A stretch of DNA of 64,000 nucleotides from Saccostrea cucullata (GCF_032062105.1 NW_026936686.1:1-64000); one strand, 5' to 3'. Counted from the first letter of the stretch, positions 39,342 to 64,000 are shown. Numbers and translations are program-made. The notes: a model not told the origin generated them from the sequence alone.

Positions 39342-41363
39342 ATACAACGCATATCAGAGTCAGTGTTTGTGGGGCTGTGTCGTAAAGTTGGGACCTCACA
39401 ACTGGTGGCCATGAGGAGAGATGTGGTGGACATCTGGGAGATGGTGAGAAATCAAGTGAAAACAAGTGATGAGATCAGAGAGATGTTGAGTGGAAGTTTC
39501 AGAGAAGGACTCAAACTGGAAGGATCAGATATAGACACTATGTCCTGGCTAAATAATTACTGTGGGATCTGGAAATTATCTCAGTCTCAGTATTACAACA
39601 TACACAGACAAGCACTGATCCTCTGTGACTGTTCTGATAGTCCACCAGGATTTACTTTGTTATATTTACTGTCACCTAGCTTGTACAGAGACATCCAGAG
39701 AGTGTGTGTTAGAATGTCTAGCAGATATTATATATCTAGTTCTAAATACAGACAGTTCCCTTTATCTGATTCATCACTACCTTATAACACCACTCAACAT
39801 GGACCCTGTGTCAGTGGAAGATTTGGAACACTAGAATATGATTACGCCCCCTGTTTTGTTAGTGACTTTTGGCCTCCCTCTGCCTTCCCGTGGATAGACA
39901 TATGTCACTCATGGCCCCAGCCTCATGTTATTGTGATATAGTGAAAAATGGATGTCACTTTGTAGCAATTGGACATAAGCTAGGAAATCATGAAGATCAT
40001 GAATGGAGAATTTCTTTCTCCCAAGCAGAACAAAAACTCGTGTATGTAATGAATCACTGTCAATTTTTAACTTACGGCTTACTTAAATTGATCTTAACAG
40101 AAATAATTAACAATGGAGTAGGTGATGATGATAAATTACTGTGTTCCTATCACATGAAGACAGCCGTTTTCTGGGTGATTCAACAAAATACAATACCTCA
40201 CTGGTGTCCACAAAATCTCCTGGGGGGGTTTCTGGGTCTGTTTTAAACTCATCCTCAAATGGGTGAATGAGGGGGTCTGTCCTAACTTCTTTATTCCAGG
40301 CAACAACATGTTTCTGAGTAAAATTCATGGCGTCAAACAACATCAATTATTTATAAGACTGTCAGAGTTGTATGAGAAGGGTTTAGCATTCCTGCTACAC
40401 AGTCCCTCCATTAGGTCTTATATTATAGATGTCCTCTATAACCCCAGAAACTCCATCTGTACAGATGATCATACTCTGATTTCTGAGGCTGAGTTTGATG
40501 AAAATCTATTTGGTGAAACATTACGTAATAGAATAATACATAAATTGGACATACATATCTGTATGAGATATCTACATACAATAGAACAGATGATAGGTTC
40601 ATCCCTCCTGACACAGTATCAAGTCTTAGTGCTACAGAAACTTACAGCTAATGTCCTTCAATATACTGCTTTTATATTACACATGGAAACTTACACACCT
40701 GACAACAAACTGAGTTATAGAGCTGACAAAATGTCCTATCGCATGCTGAAATTAGCAGCCAAATTTGGTTGTATTACAGACATGCTGTACATAGCAATGT
40801 ATTATTACAAGACGCTTAGATACACAGAAGCTATATCTATTATAGAGATGATCAAGGTTAAGTTAGCACAGCCTAAATATGTGATGTATATGGGTAATGT
40901 AGATACAGTGATGTATACTGAGGCTGTAAGAGGAAAGTCCTGGTCTACAAAGATGAGACAGACTGCAGCAGGGATTCTCAGACTTAACTATGAAATCTAT
41001 TTCATCAGTGAATTATTACCAGAACAACAGTCTGCTCTACAGAACAGTAGCCATGTATTAGATATCCCACCCTTGGTACTGTTATACATACTAGAGATCT
41101 TGTGCTACAGACATGTAGACACAATGCGAGCACAAACAGCTCTAGATGATCTACAGACCCTAGTTTACTATGATCAGGGACAGTTTATAGATTACAGAGA
41201 CATATCGTGGCAGATTCTGGGGATCTGTCAACAGGTGACAGGGAACCTCCAGGCTGCTCTATACTCATACCAACAATCTCTCAGACAAGAACCAAACAAC
41301 AACATACAAACAGCTACAGAAATGAGAATACAGAGAGTTTACCATTTGGATTCCCTTAATTAA
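39342..41363 (+). pseudogene. Mab-21/cGAS-like receptor (cGLR) with C-terminal TPR-like region, disrupted
   Basis: Nucleotidyltransferase motif SGSFREG..GSDID and third Asp in EYDYAPC. Mab-21 motifs GCHFVAIG, EWRISFSQAEQKL, LCSYHMKT, CPNFFIP.NNMF. TPR-like ILGICQQVTGNLQAALYSYQQSL. Frameshifts near 39930 and in the G7 run at 40222-40228. The likely start codon reads ATA (39342). Confidence 0.85.
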
Positions 41364-48003: not shown

Positions 48004-50342
48004 CAGACCCTGAGACGTGCTACTACCCCACACGCTCGCTGCACGAACGGTACACGAACGCTACACGGTTTGCACGAAACGCTGCACGGTTTACACGAAA
48101 CGCTACACGGTTTGCACGAAACGCTACACGGTTTACACGAAACGCTTTGCACGAAAGGCTGCGCGGTTTACATGAAAGGCTGCACGAAACGCTTTGAACA
48201 CGTTTCTCACACGCTTTGTACACGATTCTCGCACGTTTTGGCCTCGGTTTGGATTTTTACACTCGGAATATCTCGGGCATTATTACGGTTTTATCATTAA
48301 TTTAATGGAAATCTTCACAAAGTCACATTTAGCACCTGTTTAAATTAAATATCAATTAACTAGTATTACTTAAACCGATGGAAATATTTAATACTCTGAC
48401 AGTTGTAATTAATAAGTAAATAATTGTCATTTCGTATTTATGTATTTATTTATTTATTTATTTATTAAACTGTTTAAAAACGAAATGCCGATATTATGAA
48501 TGACTGTTTAATAAAATACATTTTTTAATTATATTAGTCATTCATTTCAATGTAATATTTTGACGAGTATAATTTAATAAATTAAACACAAATTCGATTT
48601 CTTACGGCAGGAATATGAACTCATTGATTTTAAATAATATTGATTATATTGTGTTTGATTTCCGTAGGCAGATTATTTTTCTAGATTTTGATTTAGTAAT
48701 AAAATTTGCCTATATACTCTACTGACGATTATTGATACATTTTTTAATGATTTTTTTTATCTTACGTAAGCATTATCTATAGGAGGGAAACCGGTAAAGG
48801 GGGGAGGGGTTAAATGTGATGTCTTAATCTATTTTTATTCTCTTTCTCTTTTTACATGAAGCTTATCAAATAACATCAGAATACCCATCATACTGTAAAA
48901 TCAATCATTTCAAAACCCGACTAAACGTATGTATATATGTGTACACTAATTAATAGTCGCGGCATTTGACTATACATTGTACATACAATGTAGATCGATC
49001 TTTACACCGGCATTCAGGTATATTACAAGAGAACTGAAATATCTTAGATGAAATAAAAAGCACGTGATTTATAAAACAAATAATTTACAATTATTCATGA
49101 TTTACTCCTAAGCTTTTCTTACATGATATTCATGAAAAGACTACCAAATTAGTTCTGTTAATTTTACTGTTTACGGCTAGAAATTTGGATTTACAAATAA
49201 AAGATGAAATCCGCTGATTTATAAGTTGTACCAATTAAATGTTTTTAGAACCATTTTATTTCAAAAACAATAAAATCCAGTCGTAATTTTCAGGTGTCAT
49301 TAAGCCGTGAACTCGTATAACAAAACAGGTTTTCAGTTGCCATGCACTCGGAGCCCGTGATCGCTGTTGTAAATGACCTTGATCACAGTTGAAAGGCGGA
49401 AAGAAGATTCCAATACATTTTTAAGGGGTGTATCTGTGCACATATTTAATAAAGCATTTAAAAAAGAATAGAAAATTAAGCATTTATTTAAACTAACATT
49501 AGATTGAAAGTAACATGTACAACAAAAAATGAAAGACTGTACTAGTAATTTAATTTACCCCCCCCCCCCCTGTTTCTAAACATGTGGTCGTCAGTGCATG
49601 TGAATTAAAATTATAAAATCCATTTATTTGACAATGATGAGCAACAGGTTTCATGTATTAAAATGTATTAAATGACACATCGTTTTAAAACTTTCTTTCA
49701 CGCACTTTAAATGTAAAGACAAGAGCGGAGTCCTGATATATTTTTGCTTTAAATTAAAAAAAAAATTTACCGATATCTTTATTTGAGAAAAAAAATATTT
49801 CAGAAGCCATAATCGCGTTGAAAGTATATTGAATTCAATGCCCTTAAAATTTTTGTACATAGTTGATTAATTTGAACACATTTTCTATAGAAGGAAAAGA
49901 AAACAAACAAATATAAATTATACATTACCGTGTAATTTCATTTTGTTGTTTCTTTTTTTTTTTACTCCTAAAATATCACAAGCATAATTAATTTAATAAC
50001 AAAATACTAATACAATTTAACATCCTGACCCATCGATAGCCATATCTAAAATGAAATGACTTCCGAATGAATCCTACACGATTCTTGCAAGAAAGTCACA
50101 CGTTTCTCACACGGTTCTTACACGAAAGTCGCACGTTTCTCACACGCTTTTCGCACGCTCGCTACACGGTTTGCACGAAACGCTTTGGAGCTTACACGAA
50201 ACGCTGCACGGTTTACACGAAACGCTACACGGTTTGCACGAAACGCTGCACGGTTTACACGAAACGCTACACGGTTTGCACGAAACGGTAAGCGCACGAA
50301 AGTCACACGCTTTTTTGGGGTAGTAGCACGTCTCAGGGTCTG
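48004..50342. mobile_element. Non-autonomous TIR element, 2.3 kb, with 21-bp subterminal repeats
   Basis: CAGACCCTGAGACGTGCTACTACCCCA ... TGGGGTAGTAGCACGTCTCAGGGTCTG; arrays of acacggtttgcacgaaacgct at both ends. Confidence 0.9.
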
Positions 50343-51232: not shown

Positions 51233-52349
51233 CTGGCGACTGCACCCGGGGGGGGGGGGGGGGGGGCGGGGCTGCGTCCAAGGGGGGGGGGGGGGAGTCA
51301 TTATCCATTAATAATCGTGGAAATTATCTATGTTTAACTAAATGGTTAAAATGATTTAATTATTAACCACTATTAAAATGATATCATTAAAAAATTTATT
51401 CATATAGGACGGATAACTTTTCTTCAAAAACTGAAAATGTTAGTATATAAACATTGTTTTACGATTTAAAAAAAAAAACTATTCGGGGGAGGGGTTTCTA
51501 TGAAGGGGGACGAATTGCTATATACAGCGAGATTGCCCACGGAAGACTAGCTATATATTAAAACTTCCCCGGGGGAAGTCTCACTGTATAATCTTCCGAA
51601 GAAAGCATCACTATCACGGCGGGGAATCTACGTCATCAATCGGGATTAGAGCACACAAAAATGGCGAACATTTTGTCGACTGAAGCTATGAAATTGCATT
51701 TTATGTTCAAGGATCGCAATATATGGAGACTTCAGGTAACCTAAAGAATGTAGAAAAGGTAGCAGGTCTATAATCTTTAAAAAAATTCCTGAATTTAACG
51801 TTAAATTTGCCAAACACTTCGACACAGTTATTGACGTGAGCGCGAAGTGTTGGGGTATAGGGCACACAATTTTACAAAAAAATCGCATATGTACAAATAT
51901 CCACAAAATGGTGACTGTCTAAGCTTAGAAATAATAACCCATATGTTAGAAGTATGTTTTTTATGTTACTTTTTATGTAAGACTTTTAAATTACGGTTGG
52001 AAAATACGATTTTATTTGTGTCTTGGTGAAACTGATATAGGTCACACAAGTTATAAAGAAGGTATGGGGCACACTTTTTTTATTGATGTACAGCTTCCAG
52101 TACTTTTTAAGCTTACATAATTCTATCATACGCACTAAAAATTTAATTAATCGAGCTTTACTTGATACTTCTTAATTGAAGTTTTCAAATTGACTTCTTA
52201 AAAATGAGTTTTTGTTGATTAAGTCCTCTTTCAAACATCAACTGTGAAAACTGATAATTATTTTAAAGAAAATATACCTTTTACAAAAGATATCTAATAT
52301 AACATATTATTTAAAAAAAAATTTAAAAATTGTAGATCAAACGAAATAA

Positions 52350-54974
52350 ATGACAAAGAGGAAAAGCAATTTGAGTCTAAATCTCCCAAAAAGGCACAGA
52401 CACAGAGATAATGAAAATAAAGATATTTCAAATGCACAAAAGCGGAAACGAATTTTCTCAACGCCTTCAAAAAGGATATCGTTCCGCCCATGGTGCACTA
52501 ACTTTCAGGGAACAAGATTGGGATGTAAGACCCCATCAAAGACGGTCAGAAAATCACCTTCAAAATCTCCAGCTCGGAAAATTCCCAGAACGCAGTTATT
52601 CAACGAATCGCTGATCAACCGCTCTGAGGACAATTTTGATATGATACCAATAGGTAACGAAAGAGAAAATAGTACTCTCCTAGATAAATTCTTAGAACTG
52701 GCACCAGATGTTGTTTCTGCGATTCAAAGACATGATCAGGGTTGCAATTTTTATAACCTGTTACAGTTGATTGCACAAGAAAGGTTTCCATGGAGAAATA
52801 TTTCATACACCCTGCTCAGTGATATTATTCAGTGGCACAGTAAAGAAAATACAACATGCATGCGATATAGCAATGAATCAAAACTTTTCTGGAAGCTGGG
52901 CTGGATTATATTTGGGGGTAAATTTATTAGATTTATGAGTGGATTCAAAAATGCCACACAACTTATATCTGGAGAAACGAGTCGCGGAAAATTCAAGCCC
53001 GACAAAGCTGATGTTAACTTTGCTGTGCCAGATATCTCCGTTCTTCGTAGTTTTTCTCCGTATGGTACCCAATCTCCTCACAGATCACCAGGAATATTTA
53101 CCGATTTGATGAAGGACATTGCAACAGCACTGCAAAACACTTCTGCATGTTTATCTTTTGATGGAAAAAAACTTAAACAAGGTTTGACAGACAGAACAGG
53201 TGATATAGACCTTCTTGGATTTGAAAAGGGAAAGTCACTGCATCAAAGGCAAAAAGAAAGATTTGAAGAACTAGATAGAATAAAGGAAATTTTAGACATA
53301 ATTACATCTAGAGCAGACGAAGAAGATGTACAGGAAATGCCCATTGATTTGAAGAGAAATATATGCAAACTGCTCAAAGGCATTCTATTATCACTGTCCA
53401 AATATGCACAGATTTCTCGAAAAACAAAAGTCAAAAAGAGCTACGCAAAAGAAAAATTCATCCAGAGATCTGGTGCAGACTGGAAGCGAGGACAATTTGT
53501 GTACGTCATCAGTGCCATTAATGCACTACTTTTTGAAATTGACGCTTTCTTAACAAGTTACAAAGACGTCATAGAAAAGATATGCTTTTATGTGTCTGTG
53601 CTCCAAGGATCCCATGGTCAATACATTTTAGGGAAAAATGTTCATTTGAACGCTTGTGAAAATTATGAGGCCCTATCCACAACAGAATCAACAGATACTC
53701 GTCTTGTTAAGCAGCGTTCCGAAACATGGTTTTACATTAGGAGGGAGGGGAGAGTTTCCGGTAGTACTATATATGCAGCAGTTGGTTTGGATGGATTAAA
53801 AAAGCTACAAGAGCATTTTGAGCGTGTTGTTTGCAAACTGCCCGAAAAAGAAAAAACAGAGTCATTGAAACAGATATTAGAATATGGAACAGAGAATGAG
53901 ATAAATGCGGTTTCAACCTTGGTATCTAAAGTTCTACCTGTTCTGTATCCGGATTTAGTGTACTTTGAAGAAGGTTGTATTCGATTACAATACAATGGAA
54001 ATACATTTATGATTGTGTCGCCTGATGGAAGCATACGACACAGAATCAATGGAAAGACGGTCGATATAATGAGCGTTGAATTCAAGTGTCCAATACGAAG
54101 TTTGCATGAAGAGTTGCCTGAAAGGTACTTGCTTCAATGTCTTGCAGAAATGGAAGCTTTAAAAGTAGAAAAGTCTCTTTATGTCTGCTGGAGACCTGAC
54201 TTAACAAGTGTGTTTGAAGTGTCCCATAATCATGAGCTTTTCGATCGTGTGGTAGGAGAAGCTGCTACTATGTATTGCATAGAAAATCCAAAACGTCCAA
54301 CCAAACTTCCAAATTCCCTAGCAGAAATTAGAGCACTTATAAAGCAAGAGTGTAATAAGGCAAAGTTCTTAGGAGAATTTCCGTCTACATTTGATTGTCA
54401 GGAAGATTGCATTAACAGAGGTTTTACCAGAAATGTTACTAACAAAGATCTACAAGATTTGATTAAAAAACTCCACTGTTTATTGATAGACGGATATGAG
54501 CTTCAAAGAGAGAAAGCTACAGAGGCAATGGTGTTTTTATGTTGTGACCTGGACAGAAATTGGTCAAAGGATCCGTTTAGATGGGCCCCAGTCTGCTGGT
54601 TTCCAAAGGGGTACAGCCTAACAAATGAGATATTTAGACCAATTGTGGAGGAGGTCCGAAACCAGTGTCATCAAAATGGAATACATGTACCGTGTTCTTC
54701 CTTTGATGGGCAATGGCATAATATTGCAGTTAGAAGTGTCAAAGGCGAACCATTGACAATCTATCAGTTGCAAAAGGATGTATGGCGTTTTGTGGAGAAA
54801 ACACAGAAATCCCAGATTGTAAAAGCTTTCAGCACAATCAACATGAATCCCACTTGGACAATTACGAGGGTCAGGTGCTCTGAAGAAGACAAAAGAAATG
54901 AGACTGTTCATATCTTATTCAAAGGCGAACCATTGACAATTTACTTTACACAATTTTCAAACAAATTAAATTGA
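52350..54974 (+). CDS. Putative DDE transposase with inserted YqaJ/lambda-exonuclease-like domain, probably C-terminally truncated
   Basis: YqaJ motifs QRSETW..R..RVSGS, YGTENE, EEG, VSPDG, VEFKCP, YLLQC (~53712-54200). They are flanked by RNase-H-like, P-element-like segments CLSFDGKKL..GDIDLLG (Asp at 53160) and ATEAMVFL..W..APVCWF..GIHVPCSSFDGQ (Asp at 54705). The basic N-terminus resembles an NLS. Confidence 0.8.
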   Translation: MTKRKSNLSLNLPKRHRHRDNENKDISNAQKRKRIFSTPSKRISFRPWCTNFQGTRLGCKTPSKTVRKSPSKSPARKIPRTQLFNESLINRSEDNFDMIPIGNERENSTLLDKFLELAPDVVSAIQRHDQGCNFYNLLQLIAQERFPWRNISYTLLSDIIQWHSKENTTCMRYSNESKLFWKLGWIIFGGKFIRFMSGFKNATQLISGETSRGKFKPDKADVNFAVPDISVLRSFSPYGTQSPHRSPGIFTDLMKDIATALQNTSACLSFDGKKLKQGLTDRTGDIDLLGFEKGKSLHQRQKERFEELDRIKEILDIITSRADEEDVQEMPIDLKRNICKLLKGILLSLSKYAQISRKTKVKKSYAKEKFIQRSGADWKRGQFVYVISAINALLFEIDAFLTSYKDVIEKICFYVSVLQGSHGQYILGKNVHLNACENYEALSTTESTDTRLVKQRSETWFYIRREGRVSGSTIYAAVGLDGLKKLQEHFERVVCKLPEKEKTESLKQILEYGTENEINAVSTLVSKVLPVLYPDLVYFEEGCIRLQYNGNTFMIVSPDGSIRHRINGKTVDIMSVEFKCPIRSLHEELPERYLLQCLAEMEALKVEKSLYVCWRPDLTSVFEVSHNHELFDRVVGEAATMYCIENPKRPTKLPNSLAEIRALIKQECNKAKFLGEFPSTFDCQEDCINRGFTRNVTNKDLQDLIKKLHCLLIDGYELQREKATEAMVFLCCDLDRNWSKDPFRWAPVCWFPKGYSLTNEIFRPIVEEVRNQCHQNGIHVPCSSFDGQWHNIAVRSVKGEPLTIYQLQKDVWRFVEKTQKSQIVKAFSTINMNPTWTITRVRCSEEDKRNETVHILFKGEPLTIYFTQFSNKLN

Positions 54975-55429
54975 TGTATCACGAATTCCTTGATTTGAAG
55001 AATTTTAGTTTGGAATACAATAAAAGTTATGCACAAAACGTTTGATTTATTATGATTTATTTAGCATTAACAAGTAACAATGTTTGCAAAGTACTATGCA
55101 AAAATAAACAAAATCAATATGAAATCATACCTGAATACTTAGTAAAACAATAAACGAGGAGAAAAAACATTGCTTTTTGTTAGAACAATTTTACGAAATA
55201 TGAAAAATCAACTGGATTTCTTCCAAATATCTCAAATTAATCTATAAAAAGAACTGTTTCTCTGAACAAAAAAAGTAATGAATGTGTACAAGCAAAGACA
55301 GAAAATTTACACATTAACCATGTTAAGCAGAACAAAACATTTAAAATGATGTCACATTTCACTCGAATGTTACAGAAAGAGAATTAGCCTAGAATGTAAA
55401 ACATCTGTTCATACCAAATAATACTATCC

Positions 55430-58250
55430 TTAATCATTTTTACTGTGTCTCTCTAGGTGTTTATCAAGATAGCGCTTTGTTTTGAAGACTTTCTTGCAAA
55501 CTCCACAAGGATACAAGCAGGCATTGTGAAGTTTGAAATGTCTATTCATATTACTTTGGAACCTAAACAATTTGTTGCATTCTTTGCATCTATGTCTCTT
55601 TTCACCTGTGTGCGTTCCCATATGATCCATTAATTGCGCTTTCTGTTCAAATGGCATATTACACTGATCACACTTGTACTTCATCCTTTTCTCCTCTCTC
55701 TTTGTATGACGTTCCAAATCTTTTATTGAGAAAAATTTCTTCTTACAAGTTCTGCATTCATATTTCCTAATTTTAATATGTTTACAATCGTGTCGTCTGA
55801 AATTGGCATTGCTGTAAAAGGCTAATCCGCATTCTTTACACTTGTAAGGTCCAACTCTCGAATGTCTTAACTCGTGCTGCCTTAATGAGCTCAAGTTTGA
55901 TAGTTCCTTGGCACAAAATTGGCAAAGTCTTTTTGAGATCTCACTACAAAGGATGAGGAAAAGAGTGGAATAACTTATTTTATGCTCAAATATTAGCAAC
56001 AATAAACATACTAGTGTCAAAAGTCTTTTTACAAAAAGCCAAATAAGGATCCAGGAACTTTTTCGAGGGGGAGGGGGGGGGGGGGTTACACAAAATCAAA
56101 AAATATTTTGACCCTAAAACATTTTGATAAACAACAAGCAAAAAAAAAAATAAATAATAAAAAAATAAACAAACATGGAAAAATTATTTCGAGTATTTGT
56201 ATGTAAGAGGGTGTTTGTTTCTGTGTTTTTGGAGGGGCATGATACTTAACATAGAAATATCGTAAAGAACTTAGAATATAAAATCTAGATTCTGGATATC
56301 CTTCTAGATCCGCGCTTGTAAAATCGCGGTAAAGGATGAGGTGACTTGCGGCCCCTCGTATACTGACAAAAAATTAAATGTCTAAATTTTACTCAAATTT
56401 TTGAATGTAACTAATCACTGATATGTGTACCTTTATAGAATACTAATTCTAACAAAAATAGAAACGTGATTTGAAAGATATAGATCTTTTATTGTGGTAG
56501 GGGTATCATGTTTACATTCAATTCCCATTGCATTTTAACCCCGCCCCACTCTTTGAAGCCCTTAAAATATACGAGCGCATGTAGGTACAATTTTCTCCTT
56601 TGGCTGGTCACTGTATTTTATTCAAATCTACCTATATGTGAAAGCAGAAAATTGTACCTAACTGCGCTCACATGCTATTTTTTAAAACATGTAAAATCTA
56701 GTTGGCCTTTCCCATTATAAACAGATCGACGGAACAAGGTTTTCTGATGTAAGAATGAATTCATATGCTAATCGAGGCACAGGCGATACTTTCTAACTGA
56801 CCAATCAGCTAAATGAAATTCGTTACGAGTGAGTACCACAAAAATATTATGGTAACATGCTTGGAATTTTACTGCTTTCCGATATCTTTTATGCATTTGA
56901 GTCACAGATTAGACACGGATCTACATATGTACCATTTCCGAGACCACAGTAAAATTTTTATACAGTTACAAATAATTGATAGAATATACATGATATACAT
57001 TAGTTTAAAGTTTTGTAGCGTGTTTGGTGAGCAATTCGTTAGGTCTGTACACGTATTCCCGAGTATCGGTGAATACAAGTTTCATGTGCATTTCTTGTCC
57101 TAAAAACCGTAAATGCTGAAAATTCATGCGTATTATTAAGTATAAACAGCATTGGCTGACCATTATAAAAGTTTGAAATGTAGAAAAGGACAACAGGTAA
57201 ATTGACCAAAACCACGTGTCTGCGATAAAATGTTAACGTAGTAAACCAGCATGTTTAGTTGTTCTGTCATCGGATTGGACAATGACTAAGTGCGAAATAA
57301 TAACAATAGCCATATAAGGTCTTCTCGGGCACGCATATCCCTCTATTGTACTAAGACCCGCCCATTCTCTTGCCATAAAAGAACATATTCGCACAAACCT
57401 GGCCGAATTTAGCTGTGATAGGGTCTAAAAAATCAAAGATAATGCAGTATTCCTTATAATTAAAATGTGTCTCAACTATTGAAACTATTCAAAAGGCGTC
57501 GTATTTATTCACTCATGTTTGAAAACTACCAACATCGTTATAGATTAAATATAATTCGTCGTGGAAAAAGGGGCCCCAGATAGCAGTTATGTCACATCAT
57601 CCTTTGATATAAATGAAAGTTAAACTCTTAATAAATTTAGGATTTTGCTTCTAGATTTGAGTTTCATCTTATAATTTTTATATGAATATAACCAAACAAA
57701 AAAAAATGAAGTATTAAGTACTAGTGTTTGAAAAGGTACTACAGGGATACGTTGTACAGGTCATTGTTAATAAACTATCGAATACCAGTCATTAAAAGGG
57801 AAACGTCAAGTTTTGATTGCATTGACAAAGAAAGGTATCATAATAATGTGGCCCATATCCCGTTTTAATACTGGTGTGCCCTACATCATTTCTAAAAAAG
57901 GGAGATTTTTACTTTTTCCCATGAATTAATAAACTTTCAAACAAGTCAAGATATTTCAAATGTTAGTTCTTAAGTGAACAAGGGGAGAAGAAAGTGTCTG
58001 ATTCATATGAAAATGTGAATAAGCGGTCGAGTTTTCAAAGTGTGTGCCCTACGTCCCGAGTTTTTCTCCCTTGTTTACAAACTGTGTCGAAGTGTTTGGA
58101 AGAATAAGATTCTATCACGGGCCAACGTAGAATATCTACGGTAGTTGACACTCTTTTGCATACTTTAGACAGTATATTGCGTTAATATTGTTTCGTTATT
58201 CGTGCAAAAAAACCAACTTCTTACCTCGAGGTGGAGTTTTCAAGCGCCAT
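55430..58250 (-). CDS. C2H2 zinc-finger protein, 6 fingers (one degenerate), ~179 aa; exons 58250-58225 and 55943-55430
   Basis: CxxC..H..H repeats with an HTGEK linker. Exon 1 (MALENSTS + AG|gtaag) joins in phase 2 to tttgtag|T GAG ATC TCA, matching the finger frame. Additional internal exons cannot be excluded. Confidence 0.8.
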
Positions 58251-58301
58251 TTTTGTGTGTTCTAATCCCGATTGATGACGTAGATTCCCCGCCGTGACTA
58301 T

Positions 58302-61114: not shown

Positions 61115-64000
61115 ATGGCTGCGCCCATACGTAAAGTTGAGAGAGAATTGGATATTAAATTAAAGAGCGAACAGGTGGAAATATTGCAAAGCCTTGTGGA
61201 AAAGAGGGACTGTATGGCAGTTTTACCAACAGGGTTTGGCAAATCATTGCCTTTTCAACTTCTCCCGCTTGTTCAGAAGGAGATGGGTCGTACCGGCATG
61301 GTTCTGGTGTGCTGCCCGCTTGTGTCTTTAATGAGAGACCAAGTGGATAGAACAAATACAATTAAAGGCTTGACAGCGGCATACAAAGGTATATGGCTTT
61401 TAATATTATTTTGTAATTATATATATTCATAAATAATGAAATGAGGGAGACGAGGACTAACTCGTCACTAACACTTTGAGGAAATTCCGGTTATTGCAAG
61501 TCGTGAAGTTGACACGCTCAAGATTCCTCACTGCTCAAAAGCCCTGCGTGCTAAGTAAAGCTTTGAACTTAAAGCCCTTCATTGATGTTTGGGAATGTTT
61601 TATATTTGTGCGAAAATGTAAAAATTCTCACATCAGACGTAAAACAATAAATAAACAGGTCCAGCACAATCTCTTGATTTAGCTATATAGCTTGAAATAG
61701 CTATATAGCTTGATTTAGCTATTTAAAATAGCTTGATTTAGGTATTTCATCATACTTTTTTTCTAAATTTGTGTAATTTTTTCAGTAGGTATAAAAATTC
61801 TAACTTTAATGCAGTGATAGTTTGGAACTTTGAACTGTTCTGTAAACAATGCATGTGAAAATTGCTAATCAAAACACGTCTCTTTCATAGACTTTGCACT
61901 CAAAGTTCTAAAAGTTTTGGGGCTCTCTAAGGCAATTGATTCATGACCACACAGTTACTTCTGGAATGAAATTATAAAGGAGGTAAAGATAATTGATTGG
62001 TGATAATTCAGCACAATATGAAGCAATCATACTTATCCATGCCTCAATGCACACAAAGTGGTGTACAGTTACCCAAACAATGGAAATACATCTTTTGCTT
62101 AAAAGTGTTCAAAAGCTGCAATGTTAAAATTATCTTTCATTTGGGTTGCTTTTTTGAAAGTCCATAGTACAAATATGAGTAATCACAAACTTGCGACTTT
62201 TTGTCTACTTCTTTAAAAAACCATTTCTGTGAAAAAGTGCATATAAATAGCTTTATCAAGCTATTCTGAATAGCTTAATAAAGCTATATACCTATTTCAA
62301 GCTATATGGCTAAATCAAGAGATTGTGCTGGACCTGATAAACAAACCACAGTGACTCAGATGAGAGTTGAATCAATAAATATGCAAACATGGTAATTCAT
62401 AATGTGCAAGCATTTTGTTTGAATTTGGCAGTTTACTCGATATAATTAGGTTCTGAAATAAAATATTCTATTTAATAGGTCAAACTCCTGATTTGGACAA
62501 GGAGATATTGGATGGGAAAATTGATGTTGTGTATGGGAGTCCCGAGTCATTACTGGGTGAATGGAGGGAACAGCTGCAACATCTTGATGTATCTGCTATT
62601 GTCATTGATGAATTTCATTTGATTTCCACATGGTAAGTAGTCAGTTAATATGTTTGATGGTGCGACCGTTGGAGCGAGGGCAGTTTTGTATATTTTAAAA
62701 ACCATTTCTAGATCTGCCTCTTCAAACCACACAAGACTCATGAAGGTTAAAGGTCAGATGCACTCGGTCTAGACTGTGACGTCACATCATTTGTATGTTA
62801 ATTTTGTTTCCTTTATGAGTGTAAAAAGTGAAAGTTTTTTTAATGGTGAGCATTTAATCTGTTTTATATCTGCAATTTCCATTAAAGCAAGACGAGTTTC
62901 TTTTTTTATTTGTGAATTTTTCCTTGGTTGTCGGAGAACGTAGTTTAGAAAACTGAAAGCGGTGCATTGTGGGTCCATAGGTACTGCGGAAAAAAATTCT
63001 ATTGAATCAATGTGCAGCAGTCCAAATTTTCTCTTCCCTCAGGCATTGCTTTAGGAGCTCGCAGTGATGCTGCGCTCGCTATAATAAGAATTGTTGGTAC
63101 AAGTAGAAACAGTTCCAATACGCTTTTCATAAAATTTAAATAACTCTGAGTTACCTTCTTAATATTAAGAAATGGAAGAAGAAATCTTCCTTAACAATTT
63201 TCTTGAAATATTTTAGGGGAGATGATGATGCACAAAATGGGAAGAAGGCATTCCGACGGTGGCTTGGTGAGCTGGGAGAACTTAGATCCCTGTTCCCTAG
63301 TGCTCCTTTGTTGGCTCTGAGTGCGACATGTACACAGAACATACAGAGACGAGTCATCAAAGCCTTAGCCTTGAATCATCACACATACGTGTATAAATCC
63401 CCTGACAAGAGGAACATCAAGTATAGTGTTAAAAAAGTTCCCGGTGACATTGATATGGCATGGACATGGTTAGTGGATGGTCTCATGGAACTGGGAGCTT
63501 TGTTTCCAAAAACACTTATATACTGTAAGTCCATTAGTGATGTAGCGAAGATCTATGACTACATAAATGATGAGGTGTCCAAAGAATTTGAGTCATTCAT
63601 TGGTATGTTTCACTCTGAGACGGAGAGTTCTATAAAGGAAAGAATATTGTTATCTATCAGGGATGAGCAGAGCCTACTGAGGATCATCATATCCACAAAT
63701 GCAATGGGTATGGGAGTGGACTTTAAGGGTCTGTCTAACATTGTTTTATATGGCCCACCTTGTTCAATGCTCGATCTCGTTCAAGAAATTGGACGTGCAG
63801 GGAGGGGGGGGGGGTGAGAAGTCTATAGCCGTACTTATGTACAACTCTCATCACCTGCAACAGTGTGACTCTGACGTGAAGAGACTTTATAAAGAGAACA
63901 CATGCAGAAGAATTCTGATGATGGAACCATTTCTCAGAGAGAATGATCTGGATGATCTCAAATCCAGCACTGGAGACTGTACCTGCTGTGATATTTGCCA
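61115..64000 (+). CDS. RecQ-family (SF2) helicase, minimal core + Zn-binding domain. Exons 61115-61388, 62479-62632, 63217->64000; +1 frameshift in the G11 run 63804-63814
   Basis: Motifs LPTGFGKS, PLVSLMRDQ, YGSPE, VIDEFH, ALSAT, STNAMGMGVD, QEIGRAGR. After the shift the frame continues with CRR...CCDIC. Splice phases 1 and 2 are consistent. Confidence 0.9.
61656..62336. mobile_element. MITE with CAG termini and 5-bp TSD (ATAAA) in RecQ intron 1
   Basis: ataaa|CAGGTCCAGCACAATCTCTTGATTTAGC ... GCTAAATCAAGAGATTGTGCTGGACCTG|ataaa. Confidence 0.85.

What the first reader, a model, noticed from the sequence alone, without database searches (positions are those of the whole stretch)
51615..58296. 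Unclassified DNA transposon: CAC termini, 5-bp TSD, DDE-YqaJ fusion gene facing a C2H2 zinc-finger gene
Seen: 52-bp near-perfect TIRs, an exact ACTAT duplication and two convergent genes. Known: CAC ends with a 5-bp TSD are typical of Transib/ProtoRAG. P elements make 7-8-bp TSDs. ISL2EU elements carry YqaJ but as a separate ORF beside a Harbinger-type transposase. Inference: this combination fits none of these groups and may be an undescribed lineage. It is the best candidate here for a new system.
Basis: partly seen in the sequence, partly recalled or inferred. Interest (0 to 1): 0.9.

Follow-up and report, generated by a model that had tools for sequence, protein, structure and literature searches.

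The report
P-type transposon with built-in exonuclease
This is a broken copy of a widespread, apparently undescribed group of jumping genes in marine invertebrates, whose cut-and-paste enzyme is related to the fruit-fly P element but has a virus-like DNA-trimming enzyme built into its core and travels with a separate DNA-binding gene.

Summary
Real element: 52-bp TIRs, ACTAT duplication, two convergent genes. It is not superfamily-less and not Transib-like. A model of a full-length relative matches P element transposase (Z 29.2; RAG/Hermes at most 9.5) and keeps D, D, DxxH and E.

It departs from known P elements in four ways:
- 21 of 24 insertions have an exact 5-bp TSD, none 7-8.
- No THAP domain.
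- A lambda-exonuclease (YqaJ) with conserved active-site motifs sits inside the RNase H fold, between D1 and D2.
- A C2H2 gene lies on the opposite strand in all 9 TIR-bounded coding families.

Relatives with TIRs occur in bivalves, a gastropod, an annelid and amphioxus; one family has 99.97% identical copies. The window copy is a non-autonomous deletion derivative: it lacks DxxH and E and carries a nested Spy-type MITE. CAC ends and convergence are common, not universal.

Likely mechanism (inferred): P-type cut-and-paste in which the exonuclease processes the 5' strand at the ends or the donor break, and the zinc-finger protein stands in for THAP. No paper found, but Repbase/Dfam could not be searched.

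The parts
51610..51614 (+). Left target-site duplication ACTAT
   Evidence: sequence
51615..51666 (+). Left TIR, 52 bp, begins CACGGCGG; holds the CTACGTCA motif at nt 14, also in Mytilus, Branchiostoma and Batillaria families
51810..51829 (+). Left subterminal inverted repeat, 20 bp, with conserved 10-mer AACACTTCGA about 200 nt inside the end; candidate protein-binding site
   Evidence: (I7)
52350..54974 (+). Truncated P-type transposase ORF (874 aa): basic N-terminus without THAP, D1 = D271, coiled coil, YqaJ nuclease (about aa 450-660), D2 = D786; similarity to relatives stops near aa 838; DxxH and E missing
53712..54152 (+). YqaJ / lambda-exonuclease core inside the RNase H fold; Q455, W460, R464, S472, E517, S557, D559, E577, K579, Y593, Q596 all present
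54919..54940 (+). Deletion scar: 22-nt exact copy of 54739-54760, read as templated filler at an internal deletion junction (inference)
   Evidence: (D12)
55430..55943 (-). Main exon of the C2H2 zinc-finger gene (5-6 fingers), convergent with the transposase; splice acceptor immediately upstream
56334..57602 (.). Nested 1,269-bp non-autonomous repeat between AAA and TTT with no TSD (Spy-type), at least 39 other copies at 91-100%; not part of the lineage
57662..58296 (-). Right terminal region, 75% like both long TIRs of a 3.3-kb non-autonomous family in the same genome
58080..58099 (-). Right subterminal inverted repeat with the same 10-mer
58225..58250 (-). Candidate first exon of the zinc-finger gene: ATG inside the right TIR, AG|GTAAG donor, phase 2 fits the acceptor before 55943; inference, no RNA data
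58245..58296 (-). Right TIR, 52 bp
58297..58301 (+). Right target-site duplication ACTAT
   Evidence: sequence

Best explanation
An internally deleted, non-autonomous copy of a distinct two-gene lineage of the P superfamily.

Shown: full-length members (about 1,300-1,550 aa) have the P-type DDE fold, with a coiled-coil-mounted lambda-exonuclease domain inserted after strand 1 and a small helical domain inserted between D2 and DxxH. They have no THAP domain, lie in CA..TG TIRs, make 5-bp TSDs and carry a C2H2 gene on the opposite strand.

Inferred mechanism: the DDE site nicks the 3' ends and joins them to target sites 5 bp apart. The YqaJ domain removes or resects the 5' (non-transferred) strand, giving the 3' single-stranded ends that Drosophila P makes by a 17-nt staggered cut, or it resects the donor break to favour gap repair (about 55% for some 5'-strand processing role). 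The zinc-finger protein binds a subterminal site and recruits the THAP-less transposase (about 50%).
For: Fold: VIA-align Z 29.2, rmsd 3.1 A, 372 of 442 residues to 6p5a; RAG1L 9.5, RAG1 9.3, Hermes 8.8 (model pLDDT 86.6). The ESM Atlas returns THAP9/TNP-like clusters.

Catalytic residues: D 55, D 56, D/H 57/58 and E 50 of 59 rows, with the D1 and E misses nearly all gaps. All 11 nuclease motif residues are kept in 54-59 of 59. YqaJ and DDE distances co-vary (Mantel r 0.52).

TSDs: 21 exact 5-bp of 24, plus one 5-bp with a mismatch, one 4-bp and one 6-bp. Six 14,353-bp copies at 99.97-99.99% lie in different flanks.

Partner gene: a zinc-finger gene in all 9 TIR-bounded coding families, with recognition helices alike among the close ones. 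THAP in 0 of 50. The subterminal 10-mer occurs only about 190-210 nt inside the ends.
Against: Zinc-finger binding to the 10-mer is untested, and two close families have only a variant of it. Not all GTP-binding residues of P are kept: the D528 position (E-3) is mostly Leu. No tree with reference P transposases could be built. One family member shows a 6-bp TSD. Two loci (L081, L094) gave no TIR pair within 10 kb.
Confidence: 0.8

Rival explanations
1. Same element class, but YqaJ works as a Tn7 TnsA-like strand-specific endonuclease that cuts the non-transferred strand at a fixed place, not as a processive exonuclease.
For: It has the PD-(D/E)XK fold and is tethered next to the DDE site. Lambda exonuclease acts as a trimeric ring (own knowledge; three chains per entry), which is hard to build in a dimeric transpososome.
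Against: It keeps the 5'-phosphate-binding motifs of lambda/alkaline exonucleases (Q, W, R, S). Best structural matches are exonucleases (Z 16.5 and 14.9).
Confidence: 0.25
2. The group deserves its own superfamily rank, as sister to P rather than a member.
For: TSD of 5 against 7-8, no THAP, two large insertions, a second gene. Sequence profiles do not detect 6p5a, and only the RNase H N-terminal Pfam model scores, weakly.
Against: Whole catalytic core and GTP-domain fold superpose on P. TSD-length variants are normally kept within a superfamily (hAT5/6/7, PMC12730594).
Confidence: 0.2
3. Already catalogued in Repbase or Dfam under a P, DNA5 or other name, so not new.
For: It is abundant in well-studied genomes (Mytilus, Branchiostoma), and Repbase curators have named other exonuclease-bearing lineages from molluscs (PMC9587614).
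Against: No paper holds YqaJ + transposase + P element. The YqaJ and lambda-exonuclease searches return only ISL2EU/PHIS and KolobokE. NCBI/UniRef name the proteins only as hypothetical or YqaJ-domain.
Confidence: 0.35
4. The zinc-finger gene is passive cargo or a regulator/repressor, not a transposition factor.
For: C2H2 genes are common cargo. Its position flips between clades, and distant copies are only 26-33% alike.
Against: It is retained in every TIR-bounded family across three phyla. The closest zinc finger in this genome with a contig context (46%) again faces a homologous transposase on C11428.
Confidence: 0.35
5. Transib/ProtoRAG relative, as the CAC ends, 5-bp TSD and convergent genes suggest.
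For: Termini and TSD length fit the CMCT description (PMC12730594).
Against: It has DxxH rather than the C(2)C/H(3-4)H signature. RAG1/RAG1L give Z 9.3-9.5 against 29.2 for P. The partner is C2H2, not RAG2-like.
Confidence: 0.02

Closest known systems
P superfamily (Drosophila P, 1360, Galileo, THAP9)
   Same: Catalytic fold including the helical insertion domain, D-D-DxxH-E signature, CA..TG ends, subterminal inverted repeats, internally deleted derivatives; long TIRs as in Galileo.
   Different: 5-bp rather than 7-8-bp TSD; no THAP; lambda-exonuclease inserted between D1 and D2 (513 aa apart against 73); D2 to DxxH 365 aa against 36; separate C2H2 gene; D528 position not conserved.
KolobokE
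   Same: [quoted passage not shown]
   Different: There the nuclease lies downstream of the transposase, the TSD is TTAA and the ends are RR..YY. Here it is inside the core, with 5-bp variable TSDs and CA ends.
ISL2EU (PHIS)
   Same: Two genes, YqaJ nuclease (PMC4482050).
   Different: YqaJ is on the second ORF, the transposase is Harbinger-type with THAP, the TSD is AT and the ends are GG.
Transib / ProtoRAG (CMCT clade)
   Same: CA..TG ends and 5-bp TSD; convergent two-gene layout (ProtoRAG, own knowledge).
   Different: Different transposase signature and fold; partner is not RAG2-like; CAG/CAA ends and divergent layouts also occur here.
PIF/Harbinger
   Same: Transposase plus a separate DNA-binding protein (Myb/SANT), the model for the proposed role of the zinc finger.
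   Different: Unrelated transposase, 3-bp TSD, no nuclease insertion.
Tn7 TnsA/TnsB (own knowledge)
   Same: A DDE enzyme paired with a PD-(D/E)XK nuclease; 5-bp TSD.
   Different: Bacterial, separate proteins, TnsA is an endonuclease; no homology shown.

Membership tests
P superfamily | DDE triad with C/D(2)H signature | tested here: met
   D337, D850, D1215xxH1218, E1380 of P0004 conserved across 59 rows; window copy keeps only the two D
P superfamily | P-type RNase H fold with helical (GTP-binding) insertion domain | tested here: met
   Z 29.2 to 6p5a; PF21788/PF21789 clusters at 0.96; PF21787 in 12 of 35
P superfamily | 7-8-bp TSD | tested here: not met
   0 of 24 insertions; 21 exact 5-bp; P 8 bp in PMC7776569, Galileo 7-8 bp in PMC4168063
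P superfamily | N-terminal THAP (C2CH) domain | tested here: not met
   0 of 50 full-length proteins by motif; no Pfam THAP; 6 have a single N-terminal C2H2-like finger. An unannotated upstream exon is not excluded.
P superfamily | GTP-binding residues (K385, K400, V401, S409, F443, D444, N447, D528) | tested here: inconclusive
   E-3 (D528) is Leu in 36 of 59; the others could be placed only by spacing, with no residue-level superposition
P superfamily | GTP dependence and 17-nt staggered end cleavage | not testable with these tools
   biochemical
P superfamily | Phylogenetic placement inside P | not tested
   no reference P sequences obtainable as tool output
Transib/ProtoRAG (CMCT) | CA..TG ends and 2-5-bp TSD | tested here: met
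Transib/ProtoRAG (CMCT) | C(2)C and H(3-4)H motifs, RAG1-like fold | tested here: not met
   DxxH instead; RAG Z at most 9.5
KolobokE | TTAA TSD, RR..YY ends, nuclease downstream of the transposase | tested here: not met
ISL2EU | YqaJ on a separate ORF, AT TSD, GG ends | tested here: not met
hAT5 | hAT transposase with 5-bp TSD | tested here: not met
   TSD fits, but Hermes Z 8.8 against P 29.2 and no hAT Pfam domain
YqaJ / lambda exonuclease | Q..W...R, S, E, SPDG, ExK, Y..Q motifs | tested here: met
Any classified Repbase/Dfam family | Full-length DNA match | not testable with these tools
   these libraries are not available

The most novel reading that the evidence does not exclude
A superfamily-rank sister group of P, still active in marine invertebrates, that transposes by a two-nuclease mechanism not yet shown in eukaryotes: a DDE site for the transferred strand, a built-in lambda-type nuclease for the other strand, and a separate zinc-finger protein that reads the ends in place of THAP, perhaps without GTP.
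Probability: 0.3. Interest if true: 0.85.

Novelty: new variant of a known kind. Interest (0 to 1): 0.63.

Why it matters
Three unrelated eukaryotic transposon groups now carry a lambda-type nuclease (ISL2EU, KolobokE and this one), and its role is stated as unknown (PMC4482050). [quoted passage not shown] A young family with an uninterrupted transposase ORF exists (L082), so both questions can be tested with point mutants. It also shows that CAC ends plus a 5-bp TSD do not by themselves indicate Transib/RAG, and it gives a parent for abundant non-autonomous 5-bp-TSD repeats in mollusc genomes.

Tried and rejected
Rejected readings:
- Transib/ProtoRAG, ISL2EU, KolobokE, hAT5 (see membership test).
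- Domesticated single-copy host gene: 9 coding families lie in TIRs with TSDs, and there are 55 matches in this genome.
- A bacterial home: P0003 is labelled as a Thiodiazotropha MAG but sits on a 5-kb contig and is 46% like the window protein; taken as host contamination (inference).

Searches that led nowhere:
- Sequence searches of PDB find only the exonuclease.
- The helical insertion between D2 and DxxH folds well (pLDDT 91) but gives only weak SAP/Rho-N-like matches (Z 3.4-4.1).
- The YqaJ-only search gave no stand-alone donor.
- The viral-contig scan could not run.
- The YqaJ tree timed out, and the DDE tree is the quick version only.
- The scan's own index gave nothing for this lineage.

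Limits respected:
I did not use the fetch from genomes, and later genome searches were coordinate-only, so the intact G000 relatives were not read.
- The N gap at the left end of L095 was left unfilled.
- The spliced zinc-finger model was only phase-checked; it was not joined or searched.
- Four papers were not held.

Full report
1. Observation. TIRs of 52 nt with one mismatch lie at 51615-51666 and 58245-58296, flanked by ACTAT on both sides. A 20-bp perfect subterminal inverted repeat lies at 51810 and 58080. The + strand ORF 52350-54974 has a YqaJ domain above the Pfam cut-off and a weak P-type RNase H hit; the - strand frame 55430-56020 has six C2H2 matches.

2. This copy is defective. The genome (1.17 Gb; nearest named proteins are from bivalves) holds 55 matches to the ORF, with open frames up to 1,500 aa, and nearly all long matches stop near query residue 835. 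Full-length relatives of about 1,300-1,550 aa go on through a DxxH motif and a final E, both absent here. At the break a 22-nt exact copy of sequence 180 bp upstream is found, which I read as filler from interrupted gap repair (inference). Only 511 bp separate the junction from the zinc-finger stop, against 1.5-4.7 kb from ORF end to zinc-finger stop in four relatives. A 1,269-bp repeat at 56334-57602 is a later insertion: it sits between AAA and TTT without duplication in all eight other copies read, the Spy signature (PMC4482050). The exact TIR occurs only at these two ends in the assembly, so this subfamily is single-copy here.

3. It belongs to a mobile lineage. The right end is 75% like the long TIRs of a 3.1-3.4-kb non-autonomous family. 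Of 10 copies with both ends, 8 have exact 5-bp TSDs, one a 5-bp TSD with one mismatch, and one a 4-bp TSD. In other assemblies: six copies of a 14,353-bp element, 99.97-99.99% identical, in unrelated flanks, all 5-bp; Mytilus edulis, 5-bp; Mya arenaria, 5-bp in an A-run; Branchiostoma belcheri, Batillaria attramentaria and Owenia fusiformis, all 5-bp; L096, fetched after the pattern was set, 5-bp; L088, 6-bp. The total is 21 of 24 exact 5-bp and none of 7-8. Ends are CAC (6 families), CAG (2) or CAA (2). TIRs run from 52 to about 900 bp. The representative library holds 289 proteins at E 1e-30 or better. No TIR pair was found within 10 kb for L081 and L094, and L095 has its left end in an assembly gap.

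4. The transposase is P-type. The AlphaFold model of P0004:225-1421 (pLDDT 86.6) aligns to the Drosophila P transposase at Z 29.2, rmsd 3.1 A over 372 of 442 residues. RAG1L, RAG1 and Hermes score 9.5, 9.3 and 8.8. Foldseek and both Atlas searches agree. D337, D850, D1215xxH1218 and E1380 are conserved and match the P signature D230/D303/D339xxH/E531 (PMC8230255). Two insertions explain why sequence profiles miss P. After strand 1 come a coiled coil, the YqaJ domain and a return helix, and only then strands 2-4. Between D2 and DxxH lie a variable linker and a small helical domain with weak SAP/Rho-N-like resemblance (inconclusive). No THAP motif was found in 50 full-length proteins. The D528 position is mostly Leu, so GTP use is open.

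5. The nuclease looks alive. The profile aligns to lambda and LHK exonucleases (Z 16.5 and 14.9) and to the RecE-like PHROG 434. Eleven motif residues are kept in 54-59 of 59 sequences that are only 34% alike in this domain, as well conserved as the DDE triad. Distances in the two domains co-vary (r 0.52), which is consistent with one old acquisition but is not proof.

6. The zinc-finger gene is part of the system. It lies on the opposite strand in all nine TIR-bounded coding families (frameshifted in Mya), and also beside L094, L095 and G000 C11428. It is convergent in ten cases and divergent, upstream, in Batillaria and Owenia, which fall in one clade of the quick tree. Among close families the proteins are 39-46% alike, with similar recognition helices. 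The 10-mer AACACTTCGA occurs about 190-210 nt inside both ends of the window, Mytilus and Mya elements and of the non-autonomous family, and nowhere else in 13 loci and the window; it is also at both sides of L095. In the window the frame has no Met before finger 1. A candidate first exon starts inside the right TIR with a canonical donor in the right phase (a 1-in-3 chance fit, unverified).

7. Mechanism. Shown: cut-and-paste hallmarks, 5-bp staggered integration, P-type core, conserved second nuclease site, linked C2H2 gene. Known: P binds internal sites through THAP and leaves 17-nt 3' extensions by a mechanism not understood (PMC7776569); lambda exonuclease degrades 5' strands and leaves 3' tails (own knowledge). 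Inferred: the inserted domain deals with the 5' strand, at the element ends or at the donor break where resection favours copy-restoring repair (about 55%). A TnsA-like fixed cut is the main rival (about 25%). The zinc finger supplies end recognition as the Myb/SANT partner is thought to in Harbinger (about 50%); cargo or repressor is the rival. The window copy cannot make an active transposase but keeps both ends and could be moved in trans.

8. Comparison and novelty. It works like a P element and its enzyme is of that superfamily, but it fails two features of described P elements, TSD length and THAP. I therefore file it as a new variant lineage, not as an ordinary member. It fails the defining tests of Transib/CMCT, KolobokE, ISL2EU and hAT5. 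Ten full-text searches found no description. Repbase and Dfam could not be searched, and I put about 35% on a prior database entry. Exonuclease-bearing transposons are precedented (PMC9587614, PMC4482050), which keeps it short of categorically new.

9. Verdict. Interest 0.63: a broad, recently active and experimentally tractable lineage with an unusual enzyme architecture, represented in this window by a broken copy. Limits on G000 sequence and on read data are listed under Tried and rejected; the joined zinc-finger model was left out.

Noticed in passing
window 4526-12118 (-): Uninterrupted 2,530-aa ORF that reads as a Helitron Rep-helicase with a C-terminal endonuclease-like domain and an N-terminal protease-like region with basic repeats (by eye).
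   Followed up: no
window 39363-41363 (+): Two ORFs (192 and 366 aa) that look like a Mab-21/cGAS-like gene with a TPR tail, split in the assembly (by eye).
   Followed up: no
window 63203-63817 (+): RecQ-type helicase fragment at the window edge, possibly from an AcademH-like element (by eye).
   Followed up: no
window 56334-57602: Spy-type non-autonomous element in AAA|TTT, at least 39 further copies, one 100% identical (C6218), so recently mobile.
   Followed up: partly
G000, e.g. C3012:2215-5518, C16470:48963-52284: 3.1-3.4-kb foldback-like non-autonomous family with about 940-bp TIRs built from the zinc-finger-side end of a related element; AT-rich 5-bp TSDs.
   Followed up: yes
L086 1-6417 and 20771-24266: Further identical, inverted partial copies of the 14-kb element directly abut the full copy on both sides, suggesting insertion into itself or local hopping.
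   Followed up: no
P0003: Family member annotated as a Candidatus Thiodiazotropha protein on a 5-kb contig; probably host DNA in a symbiont bin.
   Followed up: no
window 52117-52213: About 97-bp repeat at about 80% with more than 30 copies in the genome, inside the left non-coding region.
   Followed up: no
window 50076-50315: Tandem arrays of 21- and 33-nt units upstream of the element.
   Followed up: no
P0031, P0045, P0070, P0073, P0127: One group of family members has a single N-terminal C2H2/BED-like finger on the transposase itself.
   Followed up: no
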